From positions 1-19,174 of the forward strand of contig CBFFRP010000619.1 of assembly GCA_965644295.1 (NCBI GenBank): a DNA stretch of 19,174 bases. Reading direction: 5' to 3'. Every line of letters starts with the position of its first letter. Position 1 is the stretch's first letter. The stretch comes from Paraphysomonas bandaiensis (taxonomy: Eukaryota > Protista > Chrysophyceae). Under the pieces are notes generated by a model. That model made no database searches. It was not told the DNA's origin and was given only the letters and a program-made list of their open reading frames with translations. Positions 3,066-19,174 of the stretch are shown piece by piece. Made by a program: the position numbers and the translations under genes.

Positions 3066-4708
3066 ATGATGATGAAGAGTCTTCAACTTCGGGAGGGTAA
3101 GCCAATTTCAACTGCAGATGACTTTGAAGACAGTGTACATCGACAGCACAGCACTGTGTATGTATGTATATATAGAGCCACAAGGAACTCATAATGCCGA
3201 GGAGATATATATTTAAAGACGGAGCTCTGCATGAGCGACGAGAGCATACATCTGGTATGTTGTTGGAGAAGTACTACCAGTACGATGAGTCGAATCGTCT
3301 GGCTATAGTATCTAGCATAGATGAGGCGGAGCATGCGAGTATAGCGATAGAGAGGGACACAGGGATCAATATGGAATGCAGGCTTGCAGAGAGCGTTACA
3401 GCCGCTCGACGGACCATGAGATCACCCGAGTACTGCAGGGAGTTTGTCTCAGGGGTCCCTCATGAGCGGATGCATCTATTTGAAGAGATATGCCAGTACT
3501 TTGAGCAGTATAATATACCCATAGGGCTGCTCGATAAGCTGCTCGCTCTAAGAAACTACCACTTGAATTTTATCATTGGGGACAATGCGTCTATGACCGA
3601 TGACGTTGAGTAAGAGTTTCATGTATCACTTTGTACCAATGTGATGTCTTACGATAGGAATACTCTTGCCACTGGTCATCAGAGAGAGCACGGCGACAAT
3701 AGTTCAGGCTCCGAATCTGATGAAGAAGCTCCCATGTCCCGCTGGAGGGAGACGCAGAACAAGCTTCATATATTTGTAGACTTACTGGCTTTTATACCAG
3801 TGCGGAGCATATCTATCCGATTTATGCAGTGTCCTCGAGTGGCGACCCTTTCCCCCCGAGGGCGCCCTCCAAGTGAGTTTATGAGAGAAGCTCATTCGAC
3901 TATAGCGTCCGCTTTTAGAGCAGTAGAGCGAGAAGGAGGGCTTCTCAGCACTTCTTGCCCGGTATTAACTGCCCTACAAGAAAGTATAGGGCACACGCAA
4001 CACCTGCATGAGCCAACTGCCCACTATGTTCTAGCTGCAACACTTCCAACTGATGCCTCTCTAGAGAAACTACGATCTTTTGTTTGGGAGCGTAGTGACA
4101 GCTCCCACACACCGCTGACCTTCATATCGTGTGTTGGGGCACAAAGTTCGGGTTGCGATTGGATGAGAGATGTAGGCCGTAAAGCGCTTCTGGAAGAGGA
4201 CGAAGGAGATGTCGTACTAAAGGTGAACTAGTCGTAGGGGTATATTGCAATTTATGAGTTTCTTTTTGTAGATGCGCGGAGTTGATCCCCTAAGTTTTAC
4301 TAATGAAATTGCGTCCTATGAAGAAGAGAAGGAGCGCGTCTTAAGGTAGTCTGCTTCAGGCCCATATATATTTGAACTTATTGTATCTTGTAAAGATTCG
4401 AAGGTCCAACTTTTCCTTACACGAGGGGTTTTTGGCTTGTTAGTCATCTTGTTGCATCTCTTAACCCAGACGATATCAATGCCATGTATGAAGACCTTCC
4501 GTTCTCCAAGTACACACTTGATGAATTACTGGGTAGAATCCATACCACGAAGGAGTATGATATATACTTTTACAACAACCCTCGCAGCAAGTTCTATGTC
4601 GATCTTCACAAAAAATTTGCCGACAGCTCGAATTACTTACACGCCAGAGATATTGTTCCGTTGCTAGAAAGAGCACAACGTCGAGAGGATGGATGTACTG
4701 TTATGTGA
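3066..4708 (+). CDS. Intron-containing gene for an uncharacterised vWA-like protein, ~480 aa. Model exons: 3066-3157 (tentative), 3205-3609, 3658-4222, 4272-4345, 4396-4708
   Basis: ORFs 3194-3613, 3641-4231 and 4484-4708 join in frame through GT-AG introns of 48-50 nt. YHLNFIIGDNASM followed by SRWRE resembles the vWA beta1/MIDAS (IIDDSGSM...TRW) pattern. The C-terminal block FEGPTFPYTRGFWLVSHLVASLNPDDINAMYEDLPFSKYTLDELLGR looks conserved. The first exon needs a rare GAG acceptor, so the start is uncertain. Confidence 0.7.
3610..3657 (+). other. Spliceosomal intron, 48 nt, phase 2
   Basis: GA|GTAAGA...ACGATAG|G. Removal deletes the TAA at 3611 and joins DDVE to NTLATG in frame. Confidence 0.85.
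4223..4271 (+). other. Spliceosomal intron, 49 nt, phase 0 (alternative in-frame donor at 4172)
   Basis: AAG|GTGAAC...TCTTTTTGTAG|ATG, with a pyrimidine-rich acceptor. Removes the TAG at 4229-4231. Confidence 0.7.
4346..4395 (+). other. Spliceosomal intron, 50 nt, phase 2
   Basis: AG|GTAGTC...TTGTAAAG|A joins ERVLR to FEGPTFP, in frame with ORF 4484-4708. Confidence 0.8.
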
Positions 4709-5194: not shown

Positions 5195-6040
5195 TTATAA
5201 TACATTTCTCCACGAATCGATTGAATTTTTAACCAGTTTAGCAACCCCTGCAGTGTTTTTTCCAAATAACATGGTAAAGTGACTGCCTGCAGTTTTGTGT
5301 GTGCTGATAACGCCGGATGAAACTTCCTCCACATCTTCAACACTACAGTTATATGTCGATTGCGAAGCTCTAATATCAAGCACAGGACACGATAACAGGG
5401 GACGCTCACGCTTTTGGCGTTCATAAAACCTTCGCAAGAGTGATGTGCAGTAGGAAAAATGTGAGGCAACCGTTTTCTCAGTAGAAAGTTCCTCACTTTG
5501 CCCATGGAATTGGTTTATCCAAGACCTCACATCATCAGCAGTAGCATTTTCGTCTGCACTTTGCATATCATTCAGATTTGAAGAACCATTCCGTAGAGGA
5601 GCATCAAAAAGTACTATCCCCGCTATTTCCAAAGAACACGCGTCGTCCACATTGTAACGCGTGAGAGTGGGTGTGCTGGAGAGTTTTTCAGCCACAACTG
5701 TAGCCACGACCCCACCATACGACCATCCGCCTAGAACTACCTTTTTCACTGCACTATCGGGCGAATTTCTACCTGATAAAACACACCCGTATGCACTTGC
5801 AAATTTGACAACGAGAGGTAGGCATTTTTCGGCCACTGCATCAATACTGGATTCATTACGCTCAACATTCTTCAGAATCGCCCCGTCATCGAGACAGTAG
5901 ACGGGATACTTCCCATCTAGATGCTCGGACAAGTCAGAGTAACTGTGAATACACTTTAGAGCAATATGGTATTTTCCACTATCAAACTTACCAGAGTCCA
6001 GTTGCGCCTGCAGGATTAAAGAGAAGAAGAGGAACTTCGT
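5195..6040 (-). other. Terminal type I thioesterase domain
   Basis: Spliced sequence PLLLFNPAGATGLCYSDL...PVYCL; nucleophile motif LGGWSYGGVVA; Asp in LFDAP; His in AGSHFTML. Confidence 0.9.
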
Positions 6041-9000
6041 CAGAAGACCCTGCCTGCAGGCAAATGATCTCGTAACCATCACTTTCTATGACCTGCGCGC
6101 CATTTTGAGATGTCTTCGCGCTTCTAGCAGAGATGGTTGCTGCAATACCACATACAGTGGGCGCAGCGAATAGCTCCTGAACACTAATAGACTCTCCACT
6201 ATCACTCCGTATCCGGAATAACAACTGAATTGCCGAAACAGAATTCCCCCTAGGGCGAAAAACGAGTCACTTTGGCAGCATATTTGAGATTCTTCCATTT
6301 GCAACACAGCAGCAAACGATTCCACAATGGCAGCCTCTAATCTCGACGAAGGATCAACTTTTTTAGAATCAAGGATGGATGATGATAAAAATGCAGAGGA
6401 CACTGCATCTGGAAGAGGAAGTCGACTTCGTTCTACCTTTCCGTTGGCACTGAGTGGTATCTCATCTAATACAACAAAATGGCGTGGAATCATATAGTCA
6501 GTAAGTGTATCTTGACATAACTCTCGCAAATTCTGAAACACCTCATCATGACTAGCATCACTATAATCGCTGCTACCCTCTATATCTACAGATCCATTCA
6601 TGTCACTCAATACGAGATACGCACACAGGGCATTATGATGCACTGTCAACGCAGCCGATGATACTCGCTTGTCCTTCATCAGCACACGCTCGATCTCACC
6701 TAGCTCTATGCGGAACCCATTTACCTTGACCTGTGAATCCTCACGCCCCAATATCTCTATATTTCCACAGGGACGCACACGGCCCAAATCGCCAGTGCGA
6801 AACAGCGACTCACCAGTTCGCGGGTGCACAATGAACTGGTATCGAGTCCTCTCGGGGTTATTATAATATCCTTTTGCTACACCTGCCCCACCAATATAGA
6901 TACCACCAGTCACCCATGATTCACAGTTGTCCAGTTCCTCATTGAGAACATACATTGTTTGGTTGCGGAGTGGTCGACCATACGGTATGCTGGACCACCC
7001 CGGTGGTATTCCAGATCCCTCTTTACTCAGCTCAAACATATTCGACCATATTGCCGCTTCTGTCGCCCCGCCCATACTAATGATGCGAATATCGGGACAT
7101 GCAGACACGGCACGTATACGATTTGGAAGAGACAACGGAATCCAGTCTCCACTCATATATACCAGACGCAAGCTAGCAGGGAGCTGAGTATTTGAATACT
7201 CACAGTGTGTCACCATCAACTCCATGAAAGCTGGAACAGTGTCCCATATTGTAATCATCTCTGCTGTCAGAATCCCTATCCATTCTTCAGGATCTGGGGG
7301 GTGTATACAATTAGACGAAGGGAGCACGACCGTGCCGCCGGCGGAGAGCAAGCCGAATATATCATACACCGACAAATCGAAACTTAATGATGACAAGCCA
7401 AACACCCTATCTGACGATGTCACCGAAAATCGCTCATTCAAATCCGCAATAGTATTCACAGCTCCCTGGTGGTGGCAGCACACACCCTTCGGTACACCCG
7501 TAGAACCGGAGGTGTAAATTAGATACGCAAGGTCAGTTGGATCTACTCGTTTTCTACGACACAGAACTGAATCTACATCAGGTGTGTGGTGCTTCCCATG
7601 CCGAGTTATTACTGAGTTCACATCCATGACTGGAATGCTAATTTCGTTAAGCCACTGACAGGACGACAGTACACGAGACTGAGTCAAAACTGCTGCGCAC
7701 TTGCTAAGATCCAGAACCTGAGTAACACGATGCTCCGGCCACGAACGACTATCCATAGGAAGATAGACACATTGAGCCATATGCACACCCAGTACAGCTA
7801 CAACTTGTTCCCAACCCTTATCCATCAAAACTGCCACCACGCTTGACTCAATCAAAGAAGGCACTTTATTGAGCAATTCACTAGCTACTATCGTAGCATA
7901 TCGCTGCATATCAGAGTACATAACGACATCTCTCTCACCCAACTCATCGTAACTTACAACCGCAGGCATAATATCACAATTCGTCGCAGTCTTACATACA
8001 CGAATAAACCCTTCGTGCATGAGATCTTTGCTGAGAGGACATGGAGGTGAAACGGGCACAGGCGATGGAGGGGGAGCGATTGCTTCGGACACAGGGTTCT
8101 TCCACACCTGGGGGTCATCCGAGCAAACCAAATCAAGCATCGCAGAGTACGTCTTGTGCATCCCATGAACTACTTCATCTGGAAAAGTTCCCTCTACTAT
8201 ATCCATTGAAGCACATGCTGTACCGGCGGGGTCTGATTTAATTGCATTGACGCAGGCCGTATGAGGTACTCTTTCAGAGAAGAATCTCTCTTTGAACATC
8301 CAATTTCTTGACGACACTTGCTGATTTCCCTGTTCGACGCCAATCGGAGTTGTGAAAATGAATGGGGCTACCGCCTGAAACGTTTTACCCTGAACTCTAT
8401 TTAGCTCTTGCATAACCTCTACGCCACTCATGCATGCATGCTCTAGATTCTGAGAGAGTTCTTTGGCAACACGTTGGATGGCTACAAGAAAAGACAATGG
8501 TTCGTCTGTGCTCTTTCGGGTCATATCAATGTCACACAGTATGGTCGAACTACAGTTGCCAACAGTCTTATTCACATCGGGGTGCACCTGGTGTCTCAGA
8601 CACTGTAAAATATTTAGCAAAAACCTTTTTGTCCTTGACCAATGGGCAATAGTTAGCGAATAGACAGCAAGCAACATTGCAGGGATGGTTACTGAATGAG
8701 CGGCACAATTAGCTTTCGCGTTATTCCATTCATCCACTGACAGCCACCTGTGCCAATTACAAAACTTTCCAGAGTCAGACAATTGATTAGGTGCTATCAC
8801 TGAAGAAGGCAAATCAGGCCCCGAAGGGAGCGTAGACAATCTCCCAAGCCAAAATTCTTTTGCACGCATGTACTCTGTTGAGAGGGGTAAGGACTCCTCA
8901 ATGGCGTGGGAGTAATCAGCGAACATTAGCCTTGAAGGAGCTGGTAATTCCTTCATGATAGCTTTGCCGCTGTGAGCGCGCCCAGTTTTTCCGTCTACAC

Positions 9001-12000
9001 AAGACAGAGCTGCTCTGTATATGGTTGACAGTTCCTGGCGGAATATGAGATCTCCCATTGCGTCCATTAGGAATAATGAAACTGTGACGTGGATAACAGA
9101 CGTGGTGGGGCCAATATGCGTGACACGAAAATCAAAGAGCGGCCATTTGTACACATTCGGCCCATTGGCAGTCATGTCAGCTCTGGTTTCTAGAGCACTA
9201 GCCTCCGCAGCAGCAGCATCTCCAGTCCACGGTGCAACATGTGACACCTTATACTTTGGACAAAAATTAACCATCATCATTTGTCCACTTGGAAGCACAT
9301 AGGATCGGAAATGGGGATGCCTTCCCACGAAAAGGGTAACAGCTTCCTCGAGTGTATGCACATCAACAGGTCCAGGATCAGAGCCCCCATCCTCCGCACC
9401 CATAACCCATTCGAAATAAATCTGGGGCGCAATGCCTTTCTGGGAATAAGAAGATGTGTGTAGACCGACAAAGTGAGCCTTATTGATACCGATAAGTGGA
9501 TAAGCGTTGAGCATACTATGCTTTCCAGGTTTTATCTCAAAAATAGGTTTACCGCTTGACTTATCACTACTCGTCCCCAGAACAGTGGGACCAGATGACG
9601 CTGCCGACGTGGCAACACCAACAAGCGACTTGATAGTAGGATTGTTGAATATCTGAGGTACTGTGACAACGATTCCTCTCTTTCGAGCATGCGACACTAC
9701 TTGCATTGAACGTAAGGAGTCCCCACCAAGGGAAAAGAAATTAGAAACCGGAAGTATAGAGACAAAATCAATACCAAGAATTTCTGCCCATACATTGCGT
9801 AATGCTCTTGCCAATGGATTGCGGGAGAAATATGCTTCAGAATCGACGTCCGCAATACTATCGTCATAGCAAGACTCCGCATCAGTGATTGTCGGCAAAC
9901 GACTTCTCTCCACTTTTCCGTTTGAACTGAGGGGAAGTTCATCCAAACACATAAAATACCGCGGAATCATATAGTCGGTTAATGAATCCTTACACAGACC
10001 ACGAAGACTTACAATAATGTCGTCATGTGGGGCGGAATAATCATCACCATAATCATTTAATACGAGATACGCACACAGGGCATTATGATGCACTGTCAAC
10101 GCAGCCGATGATACTCGCTTGTCCTTCATCAGCACACGCTCGATCTCACCTAGCTCTATGCGGAACCCATTTACCTTGACCTGTGAATCCTCACGCCCCA
10201 ATATCTCTATATTTCCACAGGGACGCACACGGCCCAAATCGCCAGTGCGAAACAGCGACTCACCAGTTCGCGGGTGCACAATGAACTGGTATCGAGTCCT
10301 CTCGGGGTTATTATAATATCCTTTTGCTACACCTGCCCCACCAATATAGATACCACCAGTCACCCATGATTCACAGTTGTCCAGTTCCTCATTGAGAACA
10401 TACATTGTTTGGTTGCGGAGTGGTCGACCATACGGTATGCTGGACCACCCCGGTGGTATTCCAGATCCCTCTTTACTCAGCTCAAACATATTCGACCATA
10501 TTGCCGCTTCTGTCGCCCCGCCCATACTAATGATGCGAATATCGGGACATGCAGACACGGCACGTATACGATTTGGAAGAGACAACGGAATCCAGTCTCC
10601 ACTCATATATACCAGGCGCAAGCTAGCAGGGAGCTGAGTATTTGAATACTCACAGTGTGTCACCATCAACTCCATGAAAGCTGGAACAGTGTCCCATATT
10701 GTAATCATCTCTGCTGTCAGAATCCCTATCCATTCTTCAGGATCTGGGGGGTGTATACAATTAGACGAAGGGAGCACGACCGTGCCGCCGGCGGAGAGCA
10801 AGCCGAATATATCATACACCGACAAATCGAAACTTAATGATGACAAGCCAAACACCCTATCTGACGATGTCACCGAAAATCGCTCATTCAAATCCGCAAT
10901 AGTATTCACAGCTCCCTGGTGGTGGCAGCACACACCCTTCGGTACACCCGTAGAACCGGAGGTGTAAATTAGATACGCAAGGTCAGTTGGATCTACTCGT
11001 TTTCTACGACACAGAACTGAATCTACATCAGGTGTGTGGTGCTTCCCATGCCGAGTTATTACTGAGTTCACATCCATGACTGGAATGCTAATTTCGTTAA
11101 GCCACTGACAGGACGACAGTACACGAGACTGAGTCAAAACTGCTGCGCACTTGCTAAGATCCAGAACCTGAGTAACACGATGCTCCGGCCACGAACGACT
11201 ATCCATAGGAAGATAGACACATTGAGCCATATGCACACCCAGTACAGCTACAACTTGTTCCCAACCCTTATCCATCAAAACTGCCACCACGCTTGACTCA
11301 ATCAAAGAAGGCACTTTATTGAGCAATTCACTAGCTACTATCGTAGCATATCGCTGCATATCAGAGTACATAACGACATCTCTCTCACCCAACTCATCGT
11401 AACTTACAACCGCAGGCATAATATCACAATTCGTCGCAGTCTTACATACACGAATAAACCCTTCGTGCATGAGATCTTTGCTGAGAGGACATGGAGGTGA
11501 AACAGGCACAGGCGATGGAGGGGGAGCGATTGCTTCGGACACAGGGTTCTTCCACACCTGGGGGTCATCCGAGCAAACCAAATCAAGCATCGCAGAGTAC
11601 GTCTTGTGAATGCTCTCAATTACAGTTGTATCCAGTTTATCAGAAAAAGATAGCTTGCAGGTGAATTTATCCTGGGACGCATGAATGACATTGCAAACTA
11701 AGTAATTAGCAAATATTTCATCAGGATGGATGTCAATACGGTTGATAGAACAATATACTTCCTCAAGTACGAACTTTTTATTACTTTCGCTGTCCATGAT
11801 CATATGCCCACCAGGGACGGCGTGAACGTTGAATGCTCCAGCAGACACTTTTTTCCAATGCCATACAGCTTCTTCACCAATATCACTTCGTCCTACTAGG
11901 GTGGTGTCATCACATCCATAGAAAACAGTCACAGGACAATGCAACTGTTGTGCGCTGTCCGGATCCCACACATAAATGCTCTCTACCAGTAAATCAGCCC

Positions 12001-15000
12001 GTGCAGTGGTAAGGAAAAATTCAGCATCAGAAGTAGAAAGGTCAAGAAAATCTTTAGAATACCAGCCCTGGTTGGTGAGATCCTTCATCAGAGATCCTGT
12101 GTCAGCCAAAGGGTCCGCATCAGATTTGATGTGCATCGGGGCTGCTTCAGCAAGTACAAATATGTGGTCAGGACCAGTACCGTAAGCTTTTGTCACGGCA
12201 AGAGCAAGCTCATAGGCTACAAGAGCACCCATCGAATATCCGAGGAAACAAAAATGATTAGGATGCCCCGATTCTGTCCACAGCATTTCTCGCAATGAAA
12301 TCAACAAGTGGTTTACAATACTAGATAAGTCCTTCATAACAGGTTCAGAAAGTTTCGTGCCGTGACCAGGGAGATCGACACTAACGAGCTCAACATTCCA
12401 CACACTCGTTGCGTCATTGCATTGGGCCATGTTGGTTAGCACGTCTTTCCAACCCGTGAATTGAGCAGAGCTTCCACCAGCAGTGTGGAAACAGAACAGG
12501 GTCATTTTCCTTTTTGCGCCCCCGGCTAAGTAATTACCTTCGTTGTTACTGGACCATTCACAGAATGCCACATTACACATCTCTGACGATTTTTTCACAG
12601 AAGAAATATTTATCCTATTCATAGCAAGTTGCTCCTCCAGCTCGCTCTGTTTTAAGACATCCAATAAGGTCATCTCATACCATGATAGCTTCGAGTGTAA
12701 ACTAAATGTAATGTGCTGGCTGGATGATGCCTTATCCAGAAAATCGATGGAGAAGAGTGATGAGCTACTGTGGCGTTTAACTGCAACTAAAAAGGCGCTC
12801 AACATACACGAATTCAAGGACTCCAACTTATAATAAGAACAATTAGATAAGGCCCTTGTGAACTGAGTCCCAGCAATTGCCTTTACCAATTCAACCCGGG
12901 TACAATGTTTGACTCCCGTTGCAACCTGACGCTCAGGAAGTATAGGATTGGGAAGTCGTGGGTAATGGGGAGTGGTATGAAGCTTTCTAGAAACTTTTCG
13001 CTCAAAGTCCTGCATTGTCGTTTTAAGGCCATCATCTGAATCGATGCAGGACGCAAGAGCCTGAAGCGACATTTCCACTGAACAAAGTAATCCTTCAAGG
13101 AAGGACGAGTTATATTCCAAACATTCTGAAGTTGCAATCAATTGCGCAGACTCACTCCCAACAACAGTTCTGACTGAAAGTGGGCAACCAATGCGATCGA
13201 TCAAGGAGTCATTTTTAATATAAAGATCACCCACAAATTCACAATTGAAAAGCTGCTCATGCTGATAATCAAAAACTACAGGAAACAAAGACCCTTTGAC
13301 AGGGGTAGATGTCAACCTTTGAATCTCTGTTAAAGGAAGATTCTCATGCTTTATGCAATCCAGTAGGTGCTTGTGAACTCTTGCCAAGAATGACTTCACA
13401 TTTTCATCATTGTCCCACGTCAGCCGAACAGGGAACGTATTTATGACAGGACCAATTATTTCTCCTAGGTCTTGTACCGCGGCCGATCGTCCTGTGGCAG
13501 TGCAGCCGTATAAAACTCCTGGTGTGTCAGAGTCTAATGTAACCATAGATTTGTACACCACTGACCATGATGCATGAAAAAAAGATGCCAATGTCACACC
13601 AACTAGACTAGCTGCTTTTCTGCATACAATAAGCAAATCTGATGACAAGTACTTAGCGCAGCGCATAACTTCTTCATCAGAGGTATTAATCATAAGAGGG
13701 GGCATATTATTAAATACATTCGGTATCTTCCATCCTCTCAAACTATTACTCCAAAACGCTTTAAGAAGATCCAGATCGTGGGCTTCCGGAAATTCCAACA
13801 AGCTATTTTCATACATTGCATAGGCTTCGAATGATGGAAACAGCTGACATTGCTCATCGAGGTAGTGGCCTTGTACACTGGCATGTCGCGTGTAGTTATC
13901 ACGTAAACAGTGCAATAAATTGCGTATCGACCAACCGTCCACTATGGCATGGTGCACAGAAAATATCAGTGCATACTCTACTGGTTGACTCTGTGACAAT
14001 TTCACCAAGCTGACTTTAAACGACAGTGGATCTCCCGGATGCACACATCCTGATCGCCGATGCTCCTGTATTTTTGATTTTACAGTCCCATCCTTACTAT
14101 TAGACACTGTAGATGAGAATTCAAACCACGAATATTGAGCCTCATAGTGTGACTTGTTGAGGCCGATTACATGTGGCTTCCACACAAGTTGCATTGGCGG
14201 GGATGCTTCCATATCAAAAGACGATCTCAGAGAGGCGTGGTCAATAATAGTGTCAACCCAAGCGTTACGAAACGCAGCAACATCAAACTTAACACGATTC
14301 ATCCTACCATCAGAAGTGATGTACCATGAAAACGTTTCAAGGAATGTCCCACTAGAAGGGTCTGACATGTAATGAAATAGCATCGCTTGTTGCATACGAG
14401 TTGCAGGAAACATCGCTTCATATTCCTTGGGCATATCAAATGTAACTTTCCTATTGTGTTGTTGCAATTCCAGCAGCAGAGAGTTTGCACGGGATTTTCG
14501 TCTACCCTTTTGCGAACCCAGCTGCAACTGCTGAATGCAAGATGCGACACTCGCCACAGTAGGATATTCAAAGACAAGAGCCGACGGAAGATCAATTCCT
14601 CCAAACTCCCTTGATAGCTCGTTACGCACCTGCACAGCACCTAAAGAGTCAATACCTAGCGAAACCAAACTATCGTGATCATCAAAGTCAATCGACGATG
14701 GCAGAACAGATGATATAGCGCATCGAACAGTTTCCAGAAGTGATGCAGAAAGTGCGATGTTTGAGGCGGATACAGCTGAACCCTGATCAGGTCGATTCTT
14801 TCGGCTAACTGAAAAGAGGCTTCCCTTGTGTCGCCACTTATACAGTGCAGGAGAATAATTAGTGTCCACACGACACGACACTACAGTTGACAATGACCAC
14901 CGACGAAGCCATTGTAAGGCTGAGGTAACCTGCTCCCTTAAGTAAAGAACATCCGAATCACGCTTTCGTTCCGGTAAAATAGAAGAAAACCACCCAAACT

Positions 15001-18000
15001 TCCCGGAAGGAAGATTGCTGGCTGCGGCAATGGCCATGGCAAACTTTTGAAGCGTTTTCCCTGGACCAACTTCGACAATTGCATACCCTTCATTTCGAAA
15101 CGACTTCAATAATCCCATAAAAACATCACAAAATTGAACTGTATTCGTTATGTGACGGGACCAATACTCCACAGTCAAGTCTGATTTTTCCACATCCAAA
15201 CCAGTCACAGTAGATATCATTCTACAGTGGGGTGTCTTCGATTCTATTATAACAGCACCGGCAGCGTTGAGGTTTTTCACAGTCCGTATAAACGCTATAG
15301 CGGCGTTGGATAACAACGGGCTATGAAACGAATGAGTTAACAGAAGTTTCTTTGACGAGCATCCCAGCAAAGATATTACTCGCAGAACATTCTCGTCCAC
15401 TCCAGCGATCACACAGGACAAATGCCCATTCGCCGCGGCTACTGCCGGCCGCAGCTCTGAATTAGGCCACGCTATAGACTCAATCGCCTCCTCCACCATT
15501 GTTTGAGAAGCTCGTACGGCATACATTGCACCACGTTCACCGGTGGAAGATGGCGTATGCTCGACACACCACGCTCGAATTGCAACTAATTGGAGAGCTG
15601 TCTTTATATCAAGAGCGCCTGCGCATACAGCTGCGGCATACTCTCCCAGAGAGTGACCTATTACCACTGTGGGAAAAACGCCACTACTCTCCCAGAGCCG
15701 ACACAGACTCACCTCTAAAGAATACAACATACACTGTGTGTACAGGGCCTCGTTCCTCTGAATCTGAGACTGAGTTTCTATTGAGAGATTGGCGGATAGA
15801 ATATCAACAAGCGAAACGGAATCATCACACCCTAGCAGTTGTCGTATATCACTAAAGCATTGTGAACAGAGTGTAAATGTATTCCGAAAGACTTCTTCAG
15901 AATCGAACAATTCCATACCCAATCCTGTGGACAGCAAATCCGGCACGCCTTGCCCAGTAAATAAGAACACAACCTCTGAGGACGATCCGTCCTCAGAACA
16001 AGAATCTGAATTACCTGAGTTCGCTATGACACTACTGCTATGTTGCTGCAATAACACATGTGAGTTCGTTCCACCCGACCCAAAGGAACTAACACCAGCT
16101 ATTGGTGGCCTTCCTGTTCGAGTTATCAGGGGTGTAGACGTGACCGGAAACTCTACCGCACGCTGTGTAGACAAGTCTATCGCAGGGTTAACTTTTTTGA
16201 AGTGTATATTGGGAGGAACTGAACTGTGTCGAAGTGACATAACAGCTTTAATAAGTCCTGCTAAACCCGCGGCACCCTCTAAGTGCCCTATATTTGACTT
16301 AACTGCACCAAGAATAAGTGCGCTGGCATCACCAGTTGCACAATTATTGAGGAACACATCGCGAATAGCACTGAATTCGATAGGGTCTCCCAGAGCAGTG
16401 CCTGTACCATGTGTTTCAATATAACTGACCTCATCAGGAGCTACCCTCCCTCGGGATAACGCTTCCTGTAGAAGCGCCTGCTGGCATTGTCCATTAGGTG
16501 CAGTGAAAGATGCACTTTTTCCATCCTGATTAGCAGCAGTAGCCTTGATGACTGCTAAAATGGGTGGACCTACACCTGCGGCATAGTCTGCCTCAGCGTC
16601 AGCAAGTCGTCGCAGAACAACTGCACCAGCCCCTTCACCCCTCACGTACCCGTTCGCGGCTGAGTCAAATACTTTGCACTTACCATCAGGAGATAACATT
16701 TGCGAACCTTGCCGAATCTGCACAAAAATATGAATAAGATTTGCACTATTCGCAGAAACATGTGGCTGCTTACCTCCAGTGCATATGGTGCGAGCAATAG
16801 GTCTGCTGACATTACAAGAGCAGTGCTACATTCCCCACCTGCTAGTGCTGAGCAAGCCATGTGTACCGCAACGAGTGAAGACGAGCATGCGGTGTCCACT
16901 ACCATTGAAGGACCAGTAAGATTTAGGAGGAAAGAGAGACGGTTTGCAGCAGCTGCAGTCGATGTTCCAGTGCTTGCGTAGGGTCCAATGGCACACTCAC
17001 TTGTTGTACATATACTGGCATCCACATGTGCACGCATCTCCATTCCTGCCCAGAGCGGGTTGCACATACCAACGTATACCCCTACATCTTTTCCATCCGC
17101 ACTGTTGATGAAATGGTGGGAACAACGCAGTGCTTCATATCCAACTTCCAACAGCAGTCTCTGGTGGGGGTCCATACCGTCCACTTCCGCTGGGCTGAGG
17201 CCAAAGTACCGGGCATCAAAGCTCTCCGCAAAAAAATCATCAATCACTCCAGCGCGGCCGCTGAACCCATCCCATCCCCATGTGTCAGGGATTTCAACAA
17301 CAGCATCCACAGCGTGCTGAAGCATATTGTAGAACTCCTCGGGACTGTTTCCTCCACCCGGGAACCGGCAAGACATACCTACAATGGCGTATTCACAAGT
17401 TGGCGGTAGATGAGTGGAGGTGGCAGGTACAGTTGTTGGAAAAGAAGATATCCGATGCTGCTTAAAATATGACAGCACAGCCCGGGGTGTAGGGTAGTCG
17501 AATAGAAAAGTCGAAGACAGAGGGCCGGCTCCAGTGCGCTCAGAAATCAGAGAAGCTAACTGCTGCATTTGCAACGAGTCAAGTCCAAGAGCCATAAAAG
17601 GTTGACTCAAAAACGAGTCCATTGAAATGTGAGATGCACCATCGGGAGATCCTAAAGTCTCATAAACAAGTTGTGAAAGTGCTTCCGCATCAATACTTTT
17701 TGCGCTTGCTAGCAAACGATGCGTAACACCAGTAGCATTTTGAGAAGAGCGTGATAAACTATACCGTATTAACACACCATTTCCTTCATTCAGCATATCC
17801 TCTGGCCGGAAATCAGGAAGTACAGCAACAACAGTAGCACCGCCATCACAGTGGAAACGAATAGTGGGGTCTCTTAGAGACAGTGCATGCTCGGCAAATG
17901 GTGTACCCGACGACAGGTACGCCGAGCAGCGTGTCACCGCTACAACATCAGATATAGTATCTGTCATAAAAGCCTGAAGAAGCATAAAGTCCCTCAAAGC

Positions 18001-18444
18001 TTTTCCAATTTGCATATTTTTGACGGATGGGTTCACAGCTACCGCTATCAATTGAAGAAACTCACCAGTGGGAGTACCAAACGTGTGATATGTTGAAAAT
18101 TTCATACGGGATATAATATCATCCACAGAATTTATCCTTTGAGTATATATCACGCCCATAACTCGATTGTCTACAGTCGCCACCCAAGTAGTGTGAGAGT
18201 CTGACGTTAATCGAAGGTGAATTTGTTGAGCATTGATACGCATACATTTATCCCAGCAATTCTCCTCGAGCTCCAGTAGATTATCCAGATCATCTAAATT
18301 TGCTTTTCTTATCGCGAATGGCATTTGTTGTACATCTGATATGCATATCTTATCGTTATTTACAAGATCTTGCAGTGTTACGCTCCTCAGAAAGAAACAT
18401 TTCTCAGCAAGAGCACAAAAGATTGGCCACATATCACTGGTCAT
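5195..18444 (-). CDS. Hybrid type I PKS-NRPS megasynthase, ~4381 aa after frameshift repair. Exons 18444-16774, 16717-5992 (frameshift at ~6246-6250), 5942-5195
   Basis: ORFs 16642-18456, 6086-16723, 5988-6224 and 5195-6082 join by two GT-AG introns and one added base into 13146 nt (4382 codons including stop). Recognisable GNAT, ACP, KS, AT, C, TE, A, PCP and Cy motifs occur in colinear order. The first in-frame ATG is at 18444; the ORF-track start at 18456 is a TTG. Confidence 0.93.
5943..5991 (-). other. Spliceosomal intron in the terminal TE, 49 nt, phase 2
   Basis: On the minus strand, TG|GTAAGT...ATTCACAG|T. Removal gives GATGL-C-YSDL, a typical TE N-terminal motif, and deletes the TAA at 5990-5988. 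Confidence 0.9.
6130..6340 (-). other. PCP2 (thiolation domain) split by a 1-nt frameshift
   Basis: DSFFALGG is in one frame and NSVSAIQLLFRIRSDSGESISVQELFAAPTV in another. Adding one base at the G5 run (plus strand C5, 6246-6250) restores FFALGGNS. Confidence 0.88.
6420..8020 (-). other. Adenylation domain A2, Cys-type
   Basis: Motifs LAYLIYTSGSTGVPKG, SFDLSVYDIFG, SGDWIP, GGATEAAIWS, IPYGRPL, FRTGDLG, QVKVNGFRIELGEIE and NGK. FDLSVYD, SGDW and GGATEAxIWS are hallmarks of HMWP2/PchE-like Cys-activating A domains. Confidence 0.92.
6609..8158. repeat. 1550-bp direct repeat, copy covering the A2 core
   Basis: Matches 10059-11608 (offset 3450). I found only two mismatches by eye, 7166/10616 and 8054/11504, both synonymous. 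Confidence 0.95.
8140..9505 (-). other. Heterocyclization (Cy)-type condensation domain with altered signature residues
   Basis: Cy-family blocks RHPHFR...GQM, WPLFDFRVT, FADY, FWLGRLSTLPSGPDLP, RHQVHPDVNKTVG, SGVEVMQEL and PFIFTT are present. There is no HHxxxDG, and the DxxxxDxxS position reads SLFLMDAMG. Confidence 0.85.
9620..9815 (-). other. PCP1 (thiolation domain)
   Basis: NFFSLGGDSLRSMQV...IFNNPTIKSL; Ser codon at 9718-9716. Confidence 0.93.
9890..11470 (-). other. Adenylation domain A1, Cys-type
   Basis: Same core motifs as A2 (identical protein over the repeat); A10 motif LPLSSNGKVER. Confidence 0.92.
10059..11608. repeat. 1550-bp direct repeat, copy covering the A1 core
   Basis: Matches 6609-8158; duplicated ORFs in the ORF track show the same 3450 offset. 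Confidence 0.95.
11745..12510 (-). other. Internal thioesterase domain resembling type II (editing) TEs
   Basis: Motifs LFCFHTAGGSSAQFTGW, VDLPGHG, FLGYSMGALVAYE (Ser codon 12235-12233), RADL, CPVTVFYGCDD, W-K and PGGH (His 11806-11804). Confidence 0.9.
12550..12990 (-). other. Degenerate C-terminal lobe of a Cy-like domain, resuming after the TE at ~11745-11590
   Basis: LHTTPHYPRLP...FTRALSNCSYYKLESLNSCMLSAFLVAVKRHSSSSLFSIDFL aligns by eye with LSTLPSGPDLP...WNNAKANCAAHSVTIPAMLLAVYSLTIAHWSRTKRFLLNIL in the downstream Cy. Confidence 0.6.
13050..14420 (-). other. Condensation domain
   Basis: Motifs FPATRMQQAMLFH, HASLRSSF, HHAIVDGWS (His codon 13954-13952), IIGPVINTFPVR and HENLPLTEIQ. Confidence 0.92.
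14530..14740 (-). other. ACP of the PKS extension module
   Basis: LVSLGIDSLGAVQVRNEL...LVFEYPTV; Ser codon 14647-14645. Confidence 0.92.
14990..15975 (-). other. Acyltransferase domain, probably malonyl-CoA specific
   Basis: VFLFTGQG, GHSLGEYAA (Ser 15652-15650), conserved Arg in VAIRA, HSFHS (close to the malonyl HAFH motif, not YASH) and EVGPG. Confidence 0.9.
16045..17394 (-). other. Ketosynthase domain, catalytic triad intact, interrupted by one intron
   Basis: AIVGMSCRFPGG, MDPHQRLLLE, DTACSSS (Cys 16887-16885), ETHGTGT, KSNIGHLEGAAG and VSSFGSGGTNSH. Confidence 0.96.
16718..16773 (-). other. Spliceosomal intron in the KS, 56 nt, phase 0
   Basis: On the minus strand, GAG|GTAAGC...TTTTTGTGCAG|ATT joins LAPYALE to IRQGSQMLSPDGKCK, restoring a continuous KS. 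Confidence 0.92.
17465..17690 (-). other. Loading ACP
   Basis: PFMALGLDSLQMQQL...FLFDYPTP; Ser codon 17577-17575. Confidence 0.92.
17761..18315 (-). other. GNAT-like PKS loading domain (CurA/GphF/SxtA-type acyl-ACP decarboxylase)
   Basis: IRKANLDDLDNLLELEENCW, GVIYTQRI, LQLIAVAVNP...IGKAL, VVAVTRC, DPTIRFH..GA and FRPED..N.GNGVLIRY match the family pattern. Thr (17934-17932) and His (17853-17851) lie at the catalytic positions. Confidence 0.88.
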
Positions 18445-18866
18445 CGTCTGTACCAATCAACAGTAAAACAATGTTCCAGAGGAGGTCAGGACATTTATAT
18501 ATCGGATAACAATGAAGTCGTAATTAACGAATGAAGCTGACGGACATATACGCATTCCAGTATACATATGGCATATATATACTATATACATTGTACACTG
18601 CCGTATCTGGTGGACCAAGACCATACATACACACTGCTTTGTACTCGTACGCACCAGTGTGGCTGTACAGCATGTTACATCCTCATAAAAACTGTAGTAT
18701 ACCATGTATACGGAGGTATACGCATCACACAGTGGTGTATAGTGTCCAACCAAATGCGGCATTATGAGGAAACTGAAAAATCGCTGCATTAACATCGACA
18801 CGCACATCCTATACACAGTTTCTCTGATGGGAGACAGGCGTCACAAGGTATTACATACACAACAGA
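18445..18866. promoter_or_regulatory. Putative bidirectional promoter region (422 bp) between the PKS-NRPS and MFS genes
   Basis: Head-to-head ATGs at 18444 (-) and 18867 (+); non-coding TA/CA-rich composition. Inferred from gene geometry only. Confidence 0.5.
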
Positions 18867-19174
18867 ATGCAAGGTAGCGGGCAAAAGGACGGCTCGCAAT
18901 TGTTGGAGAGACTTATCTCTGACGAGGAGAGTGAGGAAGTCAAAGTCGATACAGTGGACCCGAAATGGAATATATTAGATCTCATTAAATTAGCACTATG
19001 TTGGGCACTGACGCTAACAACGTCGACCCTTCTTACTACTGTTGGCCCATTAGCTGCAAAAAAAATTGGAGCAAGTGATATTTTAGCTCCTTTTACAATC
19101 GGTACATTTTTAATTGGTGCAGCTGTATCATCTGTGCCATCGGGACCTCTCTTTCGTAAATATGGTCGCTATGG
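18867..19174 (+). CDS. MFS transporter, 5' part (runs off the window)
   Basis: Not in the ORF track because no stop is reached. Translation from ATG 18867 (in-frame TGA upstream at 18825) gives MQGSGQKDGSQLLERLISDEESEEVKVDTVDPKWNILDLIKLALCWALTLTTSTLLTTVGPLAAKKIGASDILAPFTIGTFLIGAAVSSVPSGPLFRKYGRY. This has two hydrophobic helices followed by an MFS motif-A-like loop (GPLFRKYGR). Confidence 0.82.
   Translation, partial: MQGSGQKDGSQLLERLISDEESEEVKVDTVDPKWNILDLIKLALCWALTLTTSTLLTTVGPLAAKKIGASDILAPFTIGTFLIGAAVSSVPSGPLFRKYGRY

What the first reader, a model, noticed from the sequence alone, without database searches (positions are those of the whole stretch)
5195..19174. Candidate undescribed eukaryotic biosynthetic system: GNAT-primed PKS-NRPS with two Cys-type modules and two TEs, plus a divergent MFS transporter
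Seen: one spliced gene with GNAT-ACP-KS-AT-ACP-C-(half Cy/TE)-A-PCP-Cy-A-PCP-TE, no KR/DH/ER/MT/Ox domain, and an MFS gene head-to-head. Known: GNAT-like loading and Cy/Cys modules are typical of cyanobacterial, myxobacterial and proteobacterial assembly lines. Fungal PKS-NRPS hybrids are iterative reducing PKSs ending in C-A-T-R. Inference: acetyl starter plus one unreduced malonyl gives acetoacetyl, then two Cys-like residues are added. The product would be N-acetoacetyl-Cys-Cys or its thiazoline, a possible thiol, metal-binding or defence compound. I do not recognise this architecture from any characterised pathway.
Basis: partly seen in the sequence, partly recalled or inferred. Interest (0 to 1): 0.92.

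Follow-up and report, generated by a model that had tools for sequence, protein, structure and literature searches.

The report
Orphan algal PKS–NRPS gene with exporter
This is a real, nearly intact 13-kb algal gene for an enzyme assembly line that probably joins a four-carbon keto acid to two cysteine-like amino acids; it sits beside a likely exporter gene and belongs to a family shared by several algal groups whose product nobody has identified.

Summary
On the minus strand, 18444-5195 encodes GNAT-ACP-KS-AT-ACP-C-[Cy remnant with an inserted thioesterase]-A-PCP-Cy-like-A-PCP-TE. The gene has two short GT-AG introns. No KR, DH, ER, MT or Ox domain is present. An MFS gene starts head-to-head at 18867.

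Four points change the reading.
1. The gene is not unique. Epipyxis, Chromulina, Chlorochromonas, Prymnesium, Cymbomonas and Ectocarpus carry the same order or a truncated version of it. The MFS partner recurs in two other loci. A fragment was noted in Chrysochromulina parva in 2020. I found no characterised product.
2. The "Cy" domain has the Cy fold, but the whole family lacks the cyclodehydration Asp and Gln and the first Asp of DxxxxD. A linear product is therefore more likely than a thiazoline.
3. The internal TE is a type II (editing-type) thioesterase inserted in a vestigial Cy C-terminal lobe.
4. The two A domains are kept nearly identical by gene conversion, here and across the family. 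The code is Cys-like (DLYDYSMIWK), with an unusual Asp at position 278.

A one-base frame break sits in a G5 run inside the last PCP. I could not tell whether it is a sequencing error or a real mutation. This is an uncharacterised variant of a known kind of system, of moderate to high interest.

The parts
18867..19174 (+). First 102 codons of an MFS transporter gene, head-to-head with the synthetase and cut by the window end
   Evidence: ATG at 18867. Pfam MFS_1 scores 19 bits, below the cut-off. 88.6% identity over 44 aa to the MFS_1 gene next to the orthologous synthetase in L001, which is in turn homologous to the Cymbomonas neighbour.
18445..18866 (.). 422-nt divergent intergenic region between the MFS and synthetase start codons
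   Evidence: Read directly from the sequence. A shared promoter is inferred, not tested.
17725..18354 (-). GNAT-like loading domain (malonyl-ACP decarboxylase type)
   Evidence: PDB hits: SxtA 7UCL at 5e-32, GphF 6MFC and CurA 2REE at 2e-25. The Thr (VTRC) and His (RFHC) are conserved.
17440..17694 (-). Loading ACP (LGLDSL)
   Evidence: Pfam PP-binding; motif checked.
16004..17424 (-). Ketosynthase, interrupted by intron 1; Cys-His-His triad intact
   Evidence: Pfam ketoacyl-synt and Ketoacyl-synt_C. Motifs DTACSSS, HGTGT and NIGHLE are present.
16718..16773 (-). Intron 1 (56 nt, GT..AG, phase 0)
   Evidence: The flanking exons align to adjacent residues 619/620 of intron-less P0003. L001 has an intron at the same place.
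15044..15973 (-). Acyltransferase (GHSLGE; HSFH, malonyl-type motif)
   Evidence: Pfam Acyl_transf_1; motifs checked.
14519..14758 (-). ACP of the extension module (LGIDSL)
13094..14428 (-). Ordinary condensation domain (HHAIVDG)
   Evidence: Pfam Condensation. Best PDB relatives are the C domains of PvdL, McyB and BacC. The motif is conserved in the family.
12509..13033 (-). Vestige of a Cy-domain C-terminal lobe, first part
   Evidence: hhalign against a Cy profile, columns 183-440: probability 99.2%, E 1e-18. AlphaFold confidence is low, pLDDT below 50.
11759..12508 (-). Embedded type II-like thioesterase (TE1); GYSMG, Asp and GGH present
   Evidence: PDB sequence hits: RedJ at 3e-16, human TE2, RifR and SrfTEII. 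Fold matches: RedJ, ClbQ, RifR, BorB and YbtT, TM 0.75-0.89. Triad checked.
11564..11758 (-). Vestige of a Cy-domain C-terminal lobe, last strands and helix
9884..11413 (-). Adenylation domain 1, specificity code DLYDYSMIWK
   Evidence: Pfam AMP-binding and TIGR01733; code extracted.
9614..9838 (-). PCP1 (LGGDSL)
8144..9541 (-). Cy-derived domain that lacks the cyclodehydration residues (SLFLMDAMG; ...ACVNAIK)
   Evidence: Best PDB sequence hits are Cy domains: BmdB 5T3E at 2e-30, EpoB and HMWP2. Fold TM is 0.75-0.83 to all solved Cy domains, ahead of ordinary C domains. Motif losses shown.
6404..7963 (-). Adenylation domain 2, same code DLYDYSMIWK
10053..11608 (-). Gene-converted segment, copy in module 1 (end of the Cy vestige plus most of A1)
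   Evidence: Identical to 6603-8158 except at two synonymous sites.
6603..8158 (-). Gene-converted segment, copy in module 2 (end of the Cy-like domain plus most of A2)
6111..6358 (-). PCP2, split by the frame break
   Evidence: Pfam PP-binding on the downstream piece. Collinear with homologues.
6246..6250 (-). One-base frame break in a G5 run, at the LGG|NS carrier-protein motif
   Evidence: Exactly one residue of P0121 (3622) is unaccounted for. No GT..AG is present, so this is not an intron.
5943..5991 (-). Intron 2 (49 nt, GT..AG, phase 2)
5198..6080 (-). C-terminal thioesterase (TE2; GWSYGG, Asp, His), interrupted by intron 2; stop codon at 5195-5197
   Evidence: Pfam Thioesterase scores 28.6 bits against a cut-off of 26.4. 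Triad conserved in the family. No PDB sequence hit.

Best explanation
The locus is a two-gene biosynthetic unit of a eukaryotic alga, placed closest to ochrophyte (stramenopile) relatives. It consists of one hybrid PKS-NRPS megasynthase gene and a divergently transcribed MFS exporter gene, and it belongs to a conserved, uncharacterised algal family.

Proposed mechanism (inferred unless stated otherwise):
1. The single AT loads malonyl onto both ACPs.
2. The GNAT-like domain decarboxylates malonyl-ACP to acetyl-ACP. Its catalytic Thr and His are present (shown).
3. The KS, whose Cys-His-His triad is present (shown), condenses acetyl with malonyl to give acetoacetyl-ACP. This stays unreduced, because no KR, DH or ER domain is present (shown).
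4. The ordinary C domain passes acetoacetyl to the amino acid on PCP1.
5. The Cy-derived domain forms the second peptide bond to the same amino acid on PCP2, but does not cyclodehydrate. The catalytic Asp and helper Gln are replaced family-wide (shown).
6. The C-terminal TE releases the product.
7. The embedded type II-like TE1 is an in-cis editing hydrolase. It is dispensable for the core chemistry, because the chrysophyte clade has lost it.

The expected product is a linear N-acetoacetyl dipeptide of two identical Cys-type residues, that is a dithiol or its disulfide, exported by the MFS protein. A metal-binding or redox role is speculative.
For: - Domain order and intact catalytic motifs.
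- The same order, or a truncated version, in Epipyxis, Chlorochromonas, Chromulina, Prymnesium, Cymbomonas, an ENA contig and JGI metagenome contigs.
- An MFS neighbour also in L001 and in Cymbomonas L003, with the MFS proteins homologous to each other (E 1e-21).
- Family A-domain codes are DLYN[F/Y/M]S[M/L][I/V]WK against the bacterial Cys code DLYNLSLIWK. The F/M variants occur behind canonical Cy domains in bacteria.
- Loss of Cy catalytic residues in 39 of 39 family domains, while about 290 of 403 canonical domains keep them. The literature describes the Asp/Thr dyad as crucial for heterocyclisation (PMC9547227, PMC8807600).
- The condensation-positioning Asn and the second Asp of the motif are kept.
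- TE1 matches type II TEs by sequence and by fold.
- TE1-less chrysophytes form one nested clade.
- The front-end logic matches the characterised lyngbyapeptin pathway.
- Within each algal protein A1 and A2 are 73-99% identical, against 60-69% between orthologues. This argues that both modules use the same substrate.
Against: - No product, transcript or enzyme activity has been observed.
- The window's A domains carry Asp at code position 278. In the bacterial proteins I fetched, A domains with Asp there are never behind Cy domains, so the substrate may not be Cys.
- The first Asp of DxxxxD is also lost, so even condensation by the Cy-derived domain is assumed rather than shown.
- The strongly conserved replacement motif (VPHTACVNAIK) could serve a chemistry I cannot predict.
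- The reading frame is broken once, inside PCP2.
- The MFS neighbour is not within 10 kb in Prymnesium and two other loci.
Confidence: 0.5

Rival explanations
1. The gene is a very recent pseudogene in this genome. The one-base frame break in PCP2 is real, so no full-length synthetase and no product is made here, although the family is functional elsewhere.
For: The frame break lies at 6246-6250, exactly at the phosphopantetheine-attachment motif. A decayed copia-like element lies about 3.5 kb beyond the gene's 3' end.
Against: It is the only break in 13.1 kb. Every catalytic motif is intact. The correct frame stays open for 84 + 248 codons after the break, down to the conserved stop. The break is in a homopolymer, a typical site for long-read assembly errors. 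Both differences between the converted A-domain copies are synonymous.
Confidence: 0.3
2. The A domains activate an amino acid other than cysteine, such as serine, 2,3-diaminopropionate or another small polar residue. Loss of the cyclodehydration residues in the Cy-derived domain would then follow from that change of substrate.
For: The code is only 7/10 identical to DLYNLSLIWK. Asp at position 278 is shared with 13 bacterial A domains (DLYDFSL[I/V]WK), none of which sits behind a Cy domain. The bulkier residues at 299 and 322 narrow the pocket (inference).
Against: Nearly all relatives have Asn at 278. The family variants DLYNFSMIWK and DLYNMSMIWK occur behind canonical Cy domains in bacteria. 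The A domain's best single-domain PDB relatives are A domains of Cy modules, FmoA3, BmdB and PchE.
Confidence: 0.25
3. The Cy-like domain still makes a thiazoline, using other residues.
For: The fold and overall sequence are those of Cy domains. The Thr of the dyad is kept in most members. The PchE paper notes that Cy active sites are versatile.
Against: At the catalytic Asp position, 37 family domains have Val and 2 have Ile. The helper Gln is Ala in 38 of 39. The first Asp of DxxxxD is Ser or Asn. The Thr is Val in Cymbomonas and Prymnesium. No Ox domain is present.
Confidence: 0.12
4. TE1 is a releasing or cyclising enzyme that off-loads an N-acetoacetyl-aminoacyl intermediate, for example as a tetramic acid, so the main product carries one amino acid.
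For: N-beta-ketoacyl-aminoacyl thioesters are the classical substrates of Dieckmann cyclisation (general knowledge). TE1 sits directly before module 1's A-PCP, and its triad is intact.
Against: TE1's nearest relatives by sequence and by fold are hydrolytic type II editing TEs. A whole clade of the family lacks TE1 but keeps module 2 and TE2. Module 2 is conserved and kept identical to module 1 in its A domain.
Confidence: 0.08
5. The contig is bacterial contamination, or the A-domain duplication is an assembly artefact.
For: The domain types are typically bacterial. A 1.56-kb repeat at 99.9% identity could in principle be a collapsed or duplicated assembly.
Against: Two GT..AG introns are needed to keep the frame, and one is shared with L001. 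A copia-like RT remnant is present. Relatives lie on contigs carrying eukaryotic genes. Near-identity of A1 and A2 is seen in every independently assembled relative.
Confidence: 0.02

Closest known systems
Lyngbyapeptin B assembly line (lynB, Moorena bouillonii; PMC10127204)
   Same: The front end is GNAT-ACP-KS-AT plus ACP. The AT loads both ACPs, the GNAT decarboxylates malonyl-ACP, and the KS gives acetoacetyl-ACP, which is handed to a C domain. The line ends in a Cy-A(Cys)-PCP-TE module.
   Different: lynB is bacterial and split over many proteins. It O-methylates the acetoacetyl unit, has four further NRPS modules, uses a working Cy domain, and has a free-standing type II TE. The window gene has no MT, only two modules with the same A domain, a Cy-derived domain without the dyad Asp, and the type II TE built into the polypeptide.
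GNAT-type PKS loading modules (CurA, GphF, SxtA)
   Same: The GNAT-like domain is homologous (E 1e-25 to 5e-32), has the conserved Thr and His, and is followed by an ACP.
   Different: There is no N-terminal adaptor or methyltransferase region; only about 30 residues precede the domain. The host is eukaryotic.
Cy-A(Cys)-PCP modules of bacillamide, epothilone, yersiniabactin and pyochelin synthetases
   Same: The Cy fold and sequence are shared. The A-domain clade and the ...S.IWK code are shared. The nearest bacterial full-length relatives have KS-AT-Cy-A-PCP-Cy-A, and one lies next to feoAB.
   Different: The catalytic Asp, the helper Gln and the first Asp of DxxxxD are replaced family-wide. 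The first Cy is reduced to a vestige and functionally replaced by an ordinary C domain.
Dithiolopyrrolone NRPS (HlmE/DtpB, Cy-A-PCP)
   Same: A Cy-containing, Cys-activating NRPS whose enzyme-bound product is a Cys-Cys dipeptide rather than a thiazoline (PMC10134970).
   Different: It is a single module used twice, has no PKS part, and needs a set of oxidases that are not seen in this window. I did not test homology beyond the domain types.
Type II thioesterases (RedJ, RifR, YbtT, ClbQ, human TE2)
   Same: Sequence, fold and Ser-Asp-His triad are shared.
   Different: These are free-standing proteins. Here the domain is inserted in cis into a vestigial Cy lobe between C and A.
PKS-NRPS fragment of Chrysochromulina parva (O'Neill 2020, PMC7073580)
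   Same: It was described as N-acetyltransferase, KS, C and an A domain predicted for cysteine, which is the front part of this architecture.
   Different: It was only a fragment on a small contig, with no full architecture and no product. I did not retrieve its sequence, so membership is inferred from the description.
Fungal PKS-NRPS hybrids (iterative HR-PKS plus C-A-T-R)
   Same: A eukaryotic single-polypeptide fusion of a PKS to an NRPS.
   Different: This gene has no reducing or MT domains, uses GNAT priming, has two NRPS modules, and releases by TE rather than by an R domain.

Membership tests
GNAT-type PKS loading module (CurA/GphF/SxtA type) | GNAT-like domain homologous to the structurally characterised loading decarboxylases | tested here: met
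   SxtA 7UCL at 4.6e-32; GphF and CurA at about 2e-25.
GNAT-type PKS loading module (CurA/GphF/SxtA type) | Catalytic Thr and His of the decarboxylase site | tested here: met
   VTRC and RFHC align to the corresponding residues in SxtA and GphF, and are conserved in four family members.
GNAT-type PKS loading module (CurA/GphF/SxtA type) | Directly followed by a loading ACP and a KS | tested here: met
GNAT-type PKS loading module (CurA/GphF/SxtA type) | Decarboxylation of malonyl-ACP to acetyl-ACP | not testable with these tools
   Needs an enzyme assay.
Modular type I PKS extension module | KS Cys-His-His, AT GHSxG with the malonyl-type xAFH motif, ACP DSL | tested here: met
NRPS heterocyclisation (Cy) domain | Sequence and fold of the Cy clade rather than of ordinary C domains | tested here: met
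   All top PDB sequence hits are Cy domains. Fold TM is 0.75-0.83 to BmdB, EpoB, HMWP2, FmoA3 and PchE Cy, ahead of ordinary C domains.
NRPS heterocyclisation (Cy) domain | DxxxxD motif | tested here: not met
   The motif reads SLFLMD. The first Asp is Ser in 36 and Asn in 2 of 39 family domains.
NRPS heterocyclisation (Cy) domain | Catalytic Asp of the Asp/Thr dyad (BmdB D1226, EpoB D449, PchE D480) and the helper Gln | tested here: not met
   Asp is replaced by Val (37) or Ile (2). Gln is replaced by Ala in 38 of 39. The Thr is kept in 35 of 39. The role of these residues is taken from PMC9547227 and PMC8807600.
Cys-activating A domain of Cy modules (code DLYNLSLIWK) | Ten-residue specificity code | tested here: inconclusive
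   DLYDYSMIWK matches at 7 of 10 positions. Relatives have DLYN[F/Y/M]S[M/L][I/V]WK. The D278 variants found in bacteria are not in Cy modules.
Cys-activating A domain of Cy modules (code DLYNLSLIWK) | Activation of L-cysteine | not testable with these tools
   Needs ATP-PPi exchange or loading assays.
Type II thioesterase | Alpha/beta-hydrolase fold closest to editing TEs, with a Ser-Asp-His triad | tested here: met
Type II thioesterase | Free-standing protein acting in trans | tested here: not met
   The domain is embedded between C and A1 in one reading frame.
Type I releasing thioesterase (TE2) | C-terminal position after the last PCP, GxSxG, Asp and His | tested here: met
   Pfam scores 28.6 bits, just above the cut-off. 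The triad is conserved in the family. There is no PDB sequence hit.
Major facilitator superfamily transporter | MFS_1 profile match and 12-TM architecture | tested here: inconclusive
   Only 102 codons lie in the window, scoring 19 bits against a cut-off of 33.4. The L001 orthologue and the Cymbomonas neighbour carry MFS_1 hits.
Conserved algal GNAT-PKS-NRPS family (this report) | Collinear order GNAT-ACP-KS-AT-ACP-C-[Cy vestige with or without TE1]-A-PCP-Cy*-A-PCP-TE | tested here: met
   Domain maps of P0006, P0124, P0003, P0141, P0122, P0001 and P0121. The Cy* domains form a monophyletic group with 100% SH-aLRT support.
Fungal-type PKS-NRPS hybrid | Iterative reducing PKS (KR, DH, MT) and terminal C-A-T-R | tested here: not met
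   None of these domains was found.

The most novel reading that the evidence does not exclude
A two-gene cluster (synthetase plus MFS exporter) shared by chrysophytes, brown algae, haptophytes and a phagotrophic prasinophyte makes a secreted N-acyl dithiol dipeptide, or a further-processed sulfur compound. Its function would be a new kind of algal metallophore or redox or defence metabolite. It would use a Cy domain repurposed to a non-cyclising, or entirely new, reaction. Its patchy distribution would reflect transfer of the cluster between eukaryotic algae after a single acquisition from bacteria.
Probability: 0.25. Interest if true: 0.8.

Novelty: new variant of a known kind. Interest (0 to 1): 0.6.

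Why it matters
Almost no NRPS or PKS-NRPS product of eukaryotic algae has been linked to its gene. This family offers a compact test case:
- It is small, with one PKS module and two NRPS modules.
- It is conserved across distant algal groups, including bloom-forming and mixotrophic ones.
- In three loci it is paired with an exporter.
- It yields a short, testable product prediction.

It also offers three points of enzymological interest:
- A natural Cy domain without the cyclodehydration dyad.
- A type II thioesterase fused into a vestigial domain.
- Family-wide concerted evolution of two A domains within one gene.

Tried and rejected
1. Checking the frame break in independent data. A same-species Logan contig exists for the neighbouring ORFs (SRR31053356, 99% identical). 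However, a protein search with the A2-PCP2 piece found nothing above 77% identity. An exact-match scan of metagenome contigs with the 26 nt just upstream of the break found nothing. The break stays unresolved.
2. Naming the organism. The window's proteins are not in the protein collection. The closest relative is an unnamed ENA contig at about 50% identity (69% in the Cy-like domain). The SRA run carries no name in these tools. Only 'alga, closest to ochrophyte sequences' can be said.
3. Folding the Cy vestige. The AlphaFold model is confident only for TE1 (pLDDT 80-95). The vestige scores below 50 with a 7-sequence alignment, so its fold is not shown. The homology rests on hhalign.
4. Literature search for the specificity codes gave no paper. 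Five literature searches found no characterised algal pathway with this architecture.
5. My first reading, that the catalytic Asp is replaced by Asn, was a misread of the alignment by one column. Both MAFFT and HMMER place Val at the Asp position and Asn at the following His.
6. The downstream ORFs 3194-4231 are not part of the conserved unit, because they are absent from L001.
7. tRNA, Rfam and tandem-repeat scans of the window found nothing.
8. Cluster look-ups for bacterial proteins with the D278 code gave no characterised names.

Full report
**1. What is in the sequence**

The minus strand carries one very long reading frame in three ORF pieces: 18456-16642, 16723-6086 and 6082-5195, plus a short bridging ORF at 6224-5988.

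The pieces join as follows:
- A 56-nt GT..AG intron at 16773-16718, inside the ketosynthase.
- A 49-nt GT..AG intron at 5991-5943, inside the terminal thioesterase.
- One single-base frame break in a G5 run at 6250-6246, which is not an intron.

I checked each junction against homologues that lack the introns. The residues flanking intron 1 align to positions 619 and 620 of P0003. Those flanking intron 2 leave exactly the split codon. Those flanking the frame break leave exactly one residue of P0121 unaccounted for.

From the ATG at 18444 to the stop at 5197-5195 there are 13142 coding bases, one short of 4381 codons. I kept an X at the break in all scripts and did not restore the frame.

**2. 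Domains**

Pfam and NCBIfam and PDB sequence searches give this order: GNAT-like, ACP, KS, AT, ACP, C, an unassigned 175-residue stretch, thioesterase, a 65-residue stretch, A, PCP, Cy-like, A, PCP, thioesterase. No KR, DH, ER, MT or oxidase profile matched at E 0.01 or better.

The catalytic and attachment motifs I checked are all present:
- GNAT Thr and His
- KS Cys-His-His
- AT GHSLGE with a malonyl-type HSFH
- The DSL or GGDS motifs of the carrier domains upstream of the break
- HHAIVDG in the C domain
- Ser-Asp-His in both thioesterases

At the last PCP the attachment motif reads LGG|NS across the frame break, and the serine lies in the downstream frame.

On the plus strand an ATG at 18867 opens 102 codons that run off the window. 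This is the N-terminus of an MFS transporter, 422 nt from the synthetase start.

**3. The 'half Cy' and the internal TE**

With the thioesterase removed, the segment between C and A1 was aligned across 16 family members and compared with a profile of Cy domains. It matches the C-terminal lobe, columns 183-440, with probability 99.2% and E 1e-18. It is a vestige of a Cy domain.

The thioesterase is inserted inside this vestige at the same place in the six relatives that have it complete. It is absent, or reduced to a 40-54-residue trace in Ectocarpus, in the others.

The inserted domain is a type II thioesterase by two measures:
- By sequence: RedJ at 3e-16, human TE2, RifR and surfactin TEII.
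- By predicted fold: pLDDT 80-95, TM 0.75-0.89 to RedJ, ClbQ, RifR, BorB and YbtT.

The vestige itself is modelled with low confidence.

**4. The second-module 'Cy' domain**

Its best PDB relatives are all heterocyclisation domains. Its model (pLDDT 76, pTM 0.82) superposes on every solved Cy domain better than on ordinary C domains.

However, in the window and in all 39 family copies I could align, three features are changed:
- The first Asp of DxxxxD is Ser (36) or Asn (2).
- The position of the catalytic Asp, in the canonical ...TPQVWLDHQ... motif, is Val (37) or Ile (2).
- The helper Gln is Ala (38).

By contrast, canonical Cy domains in the same search keep the first Asp in 375 of 403, the catalytic Asp in 287 and the Gln in 275.

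Published structures and mutagenesis describe the Asp/Thr dyad as crucial for cyclodehydration, and an Asn as positioning the condensation step (PMC9547227, PMC8807600). That Asn and the second Asp are kept here.

I therefore read this domain as a Cy-derived condensation domain that no longer makes thiazolines. A new activity of its conserved replacement motif cannot be excluded.

**5. The A domains**

A 1556-nt segment, 6603-8158 and 10053-11608, is duplicated with two differences, both synonymous. The flanks are diverged, so this is gene conversion rather than a whole-module duplicate.

The same pattern holds in every relative. A1 and A2 within one protein are 73-99% identical, while orthologous A domains are 60-69% identical. 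In the bacterial relatives the two A domains are about 45% identical. This rules out an assembly artefact and implies that both modules use the same substrate.

The specificity code is DLYDYSMIWK in both domains. The family has DLYN[F/Y/M]S[M/L][I/V]WK, and bacterial Cy modules have DLYNLSLIWK. Among the bacterial proteins fetched, the F/M variants occur behind canonical Cy domains. In contrast, 13 A domains with Asp at position 278 are never behind a Cy domain. Cysteine is the best guess for the family. For this window the Asp adds doubt.

**6. Relatives and context**

The window's own protein is not in the protein collection. The best hits are 44-56% identical and come from the following sources:
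- An unnamed ENA contig
- JGI metagenomes
- The chrysophytes Epipyxis, Chromulina nebulosa and Chlorochromonas (Ochromonas) danica
- Prymnesium parvum
- Cymbomonas tetramitiformis
- Ectocarpus fasciculatus

Their domain maps show the same order, or truncated versions of it.

A tree of the Cy-like domains places the family as one clade on a long stem within bacterial Cy domains. The window is sister to the ENA contig, and the TE1-less chrysophytes form one nested clade. This fits a single loss of TE1 (quick search, SH-aLRT only).

In the ENA locus L001, an MFS gene lies head-to-head with the synthetase and the KS is split by an intron at the same place. In Cymbomonas an MFS_1 gene also lies head-to-head, and the two MFS proteins are homologous (32% over 220 aa, E 1e-21). 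No MFS gene lies within 10 kb in Prymnesium or in two other loci.

A profile search of 1.84 billion representative proteins found thousands of Cy domains. Only a few dozen sequences carry the family's signature.

The nearest bacterial full-length relatives have KS-AT-Cy-A-PCP-Cy-A. One of them, from Halodesulfovibrio, lies beside feoAB.

**7. How it most likely works**

Shown:
- The domains, their order and their catalytic residues.
- The absence of reducing domains.
- The loss of the Cy dyad Asp.
- The identity of the two A domains.

Inferred, by analogy with the characterised lyngbyapeptin front end:
- The AT loads both ACPs.
- The GNAT-like domain decarboxylates malonyl-ACP.
- The KS makes acetoacetyl-ACP.

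Then C adds the first residue, the Cy-derived domain adds the second, and TE2 releases. TE1 is most simply an in-cis editing hydrolase.

The product would be a linear N-acetoacetyl dipeptide of two identical Cys-type residues, exported by the MFS protein. The dithiolopyrrolone NRPS shows that a Cy-containing, Cys-activating enzyme can carry a Cys-Cys dipeptide rather than a thiazoline. Any metal-binding or redox role is speculation.

**8. Known or new**

I found no characterised pathway with this order. A 2020 survey reported a fragment with N-acetyltransferase, KS, C and an A domain predicted for cysteine on a small Chrysochromulina parva contig, and could not predict a product. The family's proteins are in public databases without names.

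This is therefore an uncharacterised variant of a known kind of system (a hybrid PKS-NRPS), and a member of a small algal family rather than a singleton. There was no MIBiG comparison tool, so 'no characterised match' rests on literature searches only.

**9. Limits**

- Transcription is untested.
- The frame break is unresolved.
- The substrate of the A domains and the activity of the Cy-derived domain are predictions.
- The contig is not human, and nothing about it suggested a virus.

Noticed in passing
window 700-1700 (+): Decayed Ty1/copia-type reverse-transcriptase remnant with stops and frame shifts, in a low-GC (37-39%) stretch. Recognisable by eye, for example ...YVDD... and the ...TRPEIAFAV... 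motif in ORF 1334-1549. No Pfam hit on the short ORFs.
   Followed up: partly
window 3194-4231 (+); L008: Two adjacent ORFs (139 and 196 aa, 27 nt apart), convergent with the synthetase, with no Pfam family. The only hit in 5.8 billion proteins is a 98% identical protein on a 1.4-kb Logan contig (SRR31053356). That contig is 99% identical in DNA and differs by a 4-bp TGTA-repeat indel near 3157. The ORFs are absent from the orthologous locus L001, so they are not part of the conserved unit.
   Followed up: partly
window 6603-8158 and 10053-11608; relatives P0001, P0004, P0006, P0007, P0122, P0141 and others: Concerted evolution of the two A domains is family-wide. A1 and A2 within one protein are 73-99% identical, against 60-69% between orthologues and about 45% in bacterial relatives.
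   Followed up: yes
window A domains (code position 278); bacterial proteins P0040, P0050, P0064, P0077, P0104, P0108, P0115, P0120 and others: A recurrent bacterial code, DLYDFSL[I/V]WK, has Asp at position 278 and was found only behind ordinary C domains or none, never behind Cy domains. Its substrate is unknown to me, and no paper in the library holds these strings.
   Followed up: partly
P0035, P0023, P0017 (L006 for P0023): A sister group on eukaryote-like contigs starts with A-PCP instead of GNAT-PKS; one starter code is VDWVTSTGDK. It has Ser at the first DxxxxD position but keeps the catalytic Asp and Gln. It looks like an intermediate state between canonical Cy domains and the family's domain.
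   Followed up: partly
P0038 (Ectocarpus fasciculatus): A partial protein model shows a one-module version, KS-AT-ACP-C-[TE1 trace]-A-PCP-TE, with only a 40-54-residue trace of TE1.
   Followed up: no
L001 7193-7522; window 18867-19174: The orthologous MFS gene in L001 appears to have an intron, an ORF-internal low-complexity stretch, where the window reads straight through. In contrast, the KS intron is shared by the two loci and absent from L004 and L007.
   Followed up: partly
L005 (Halodesulfovibrio sp. contig): The nearest named bacterial relative, with KS-AT-Cy-A-PCP-Cy-A, lies directly downstream of feoA and feoB and a DUF4198 gene. It is followed by a second large PKS and an AraC-type regulator, a context suggestive of metal acquisition.
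   Followed up: no
L003 (Cymbomonas tetramitiformis): The public gene model starts within the AT domain. No GNAT or KS was found by tblastn in the 2.6 kb between the MFS gene and the model start, so the front end is either missing, in an assembly gap, or lost.
   Followed up: no
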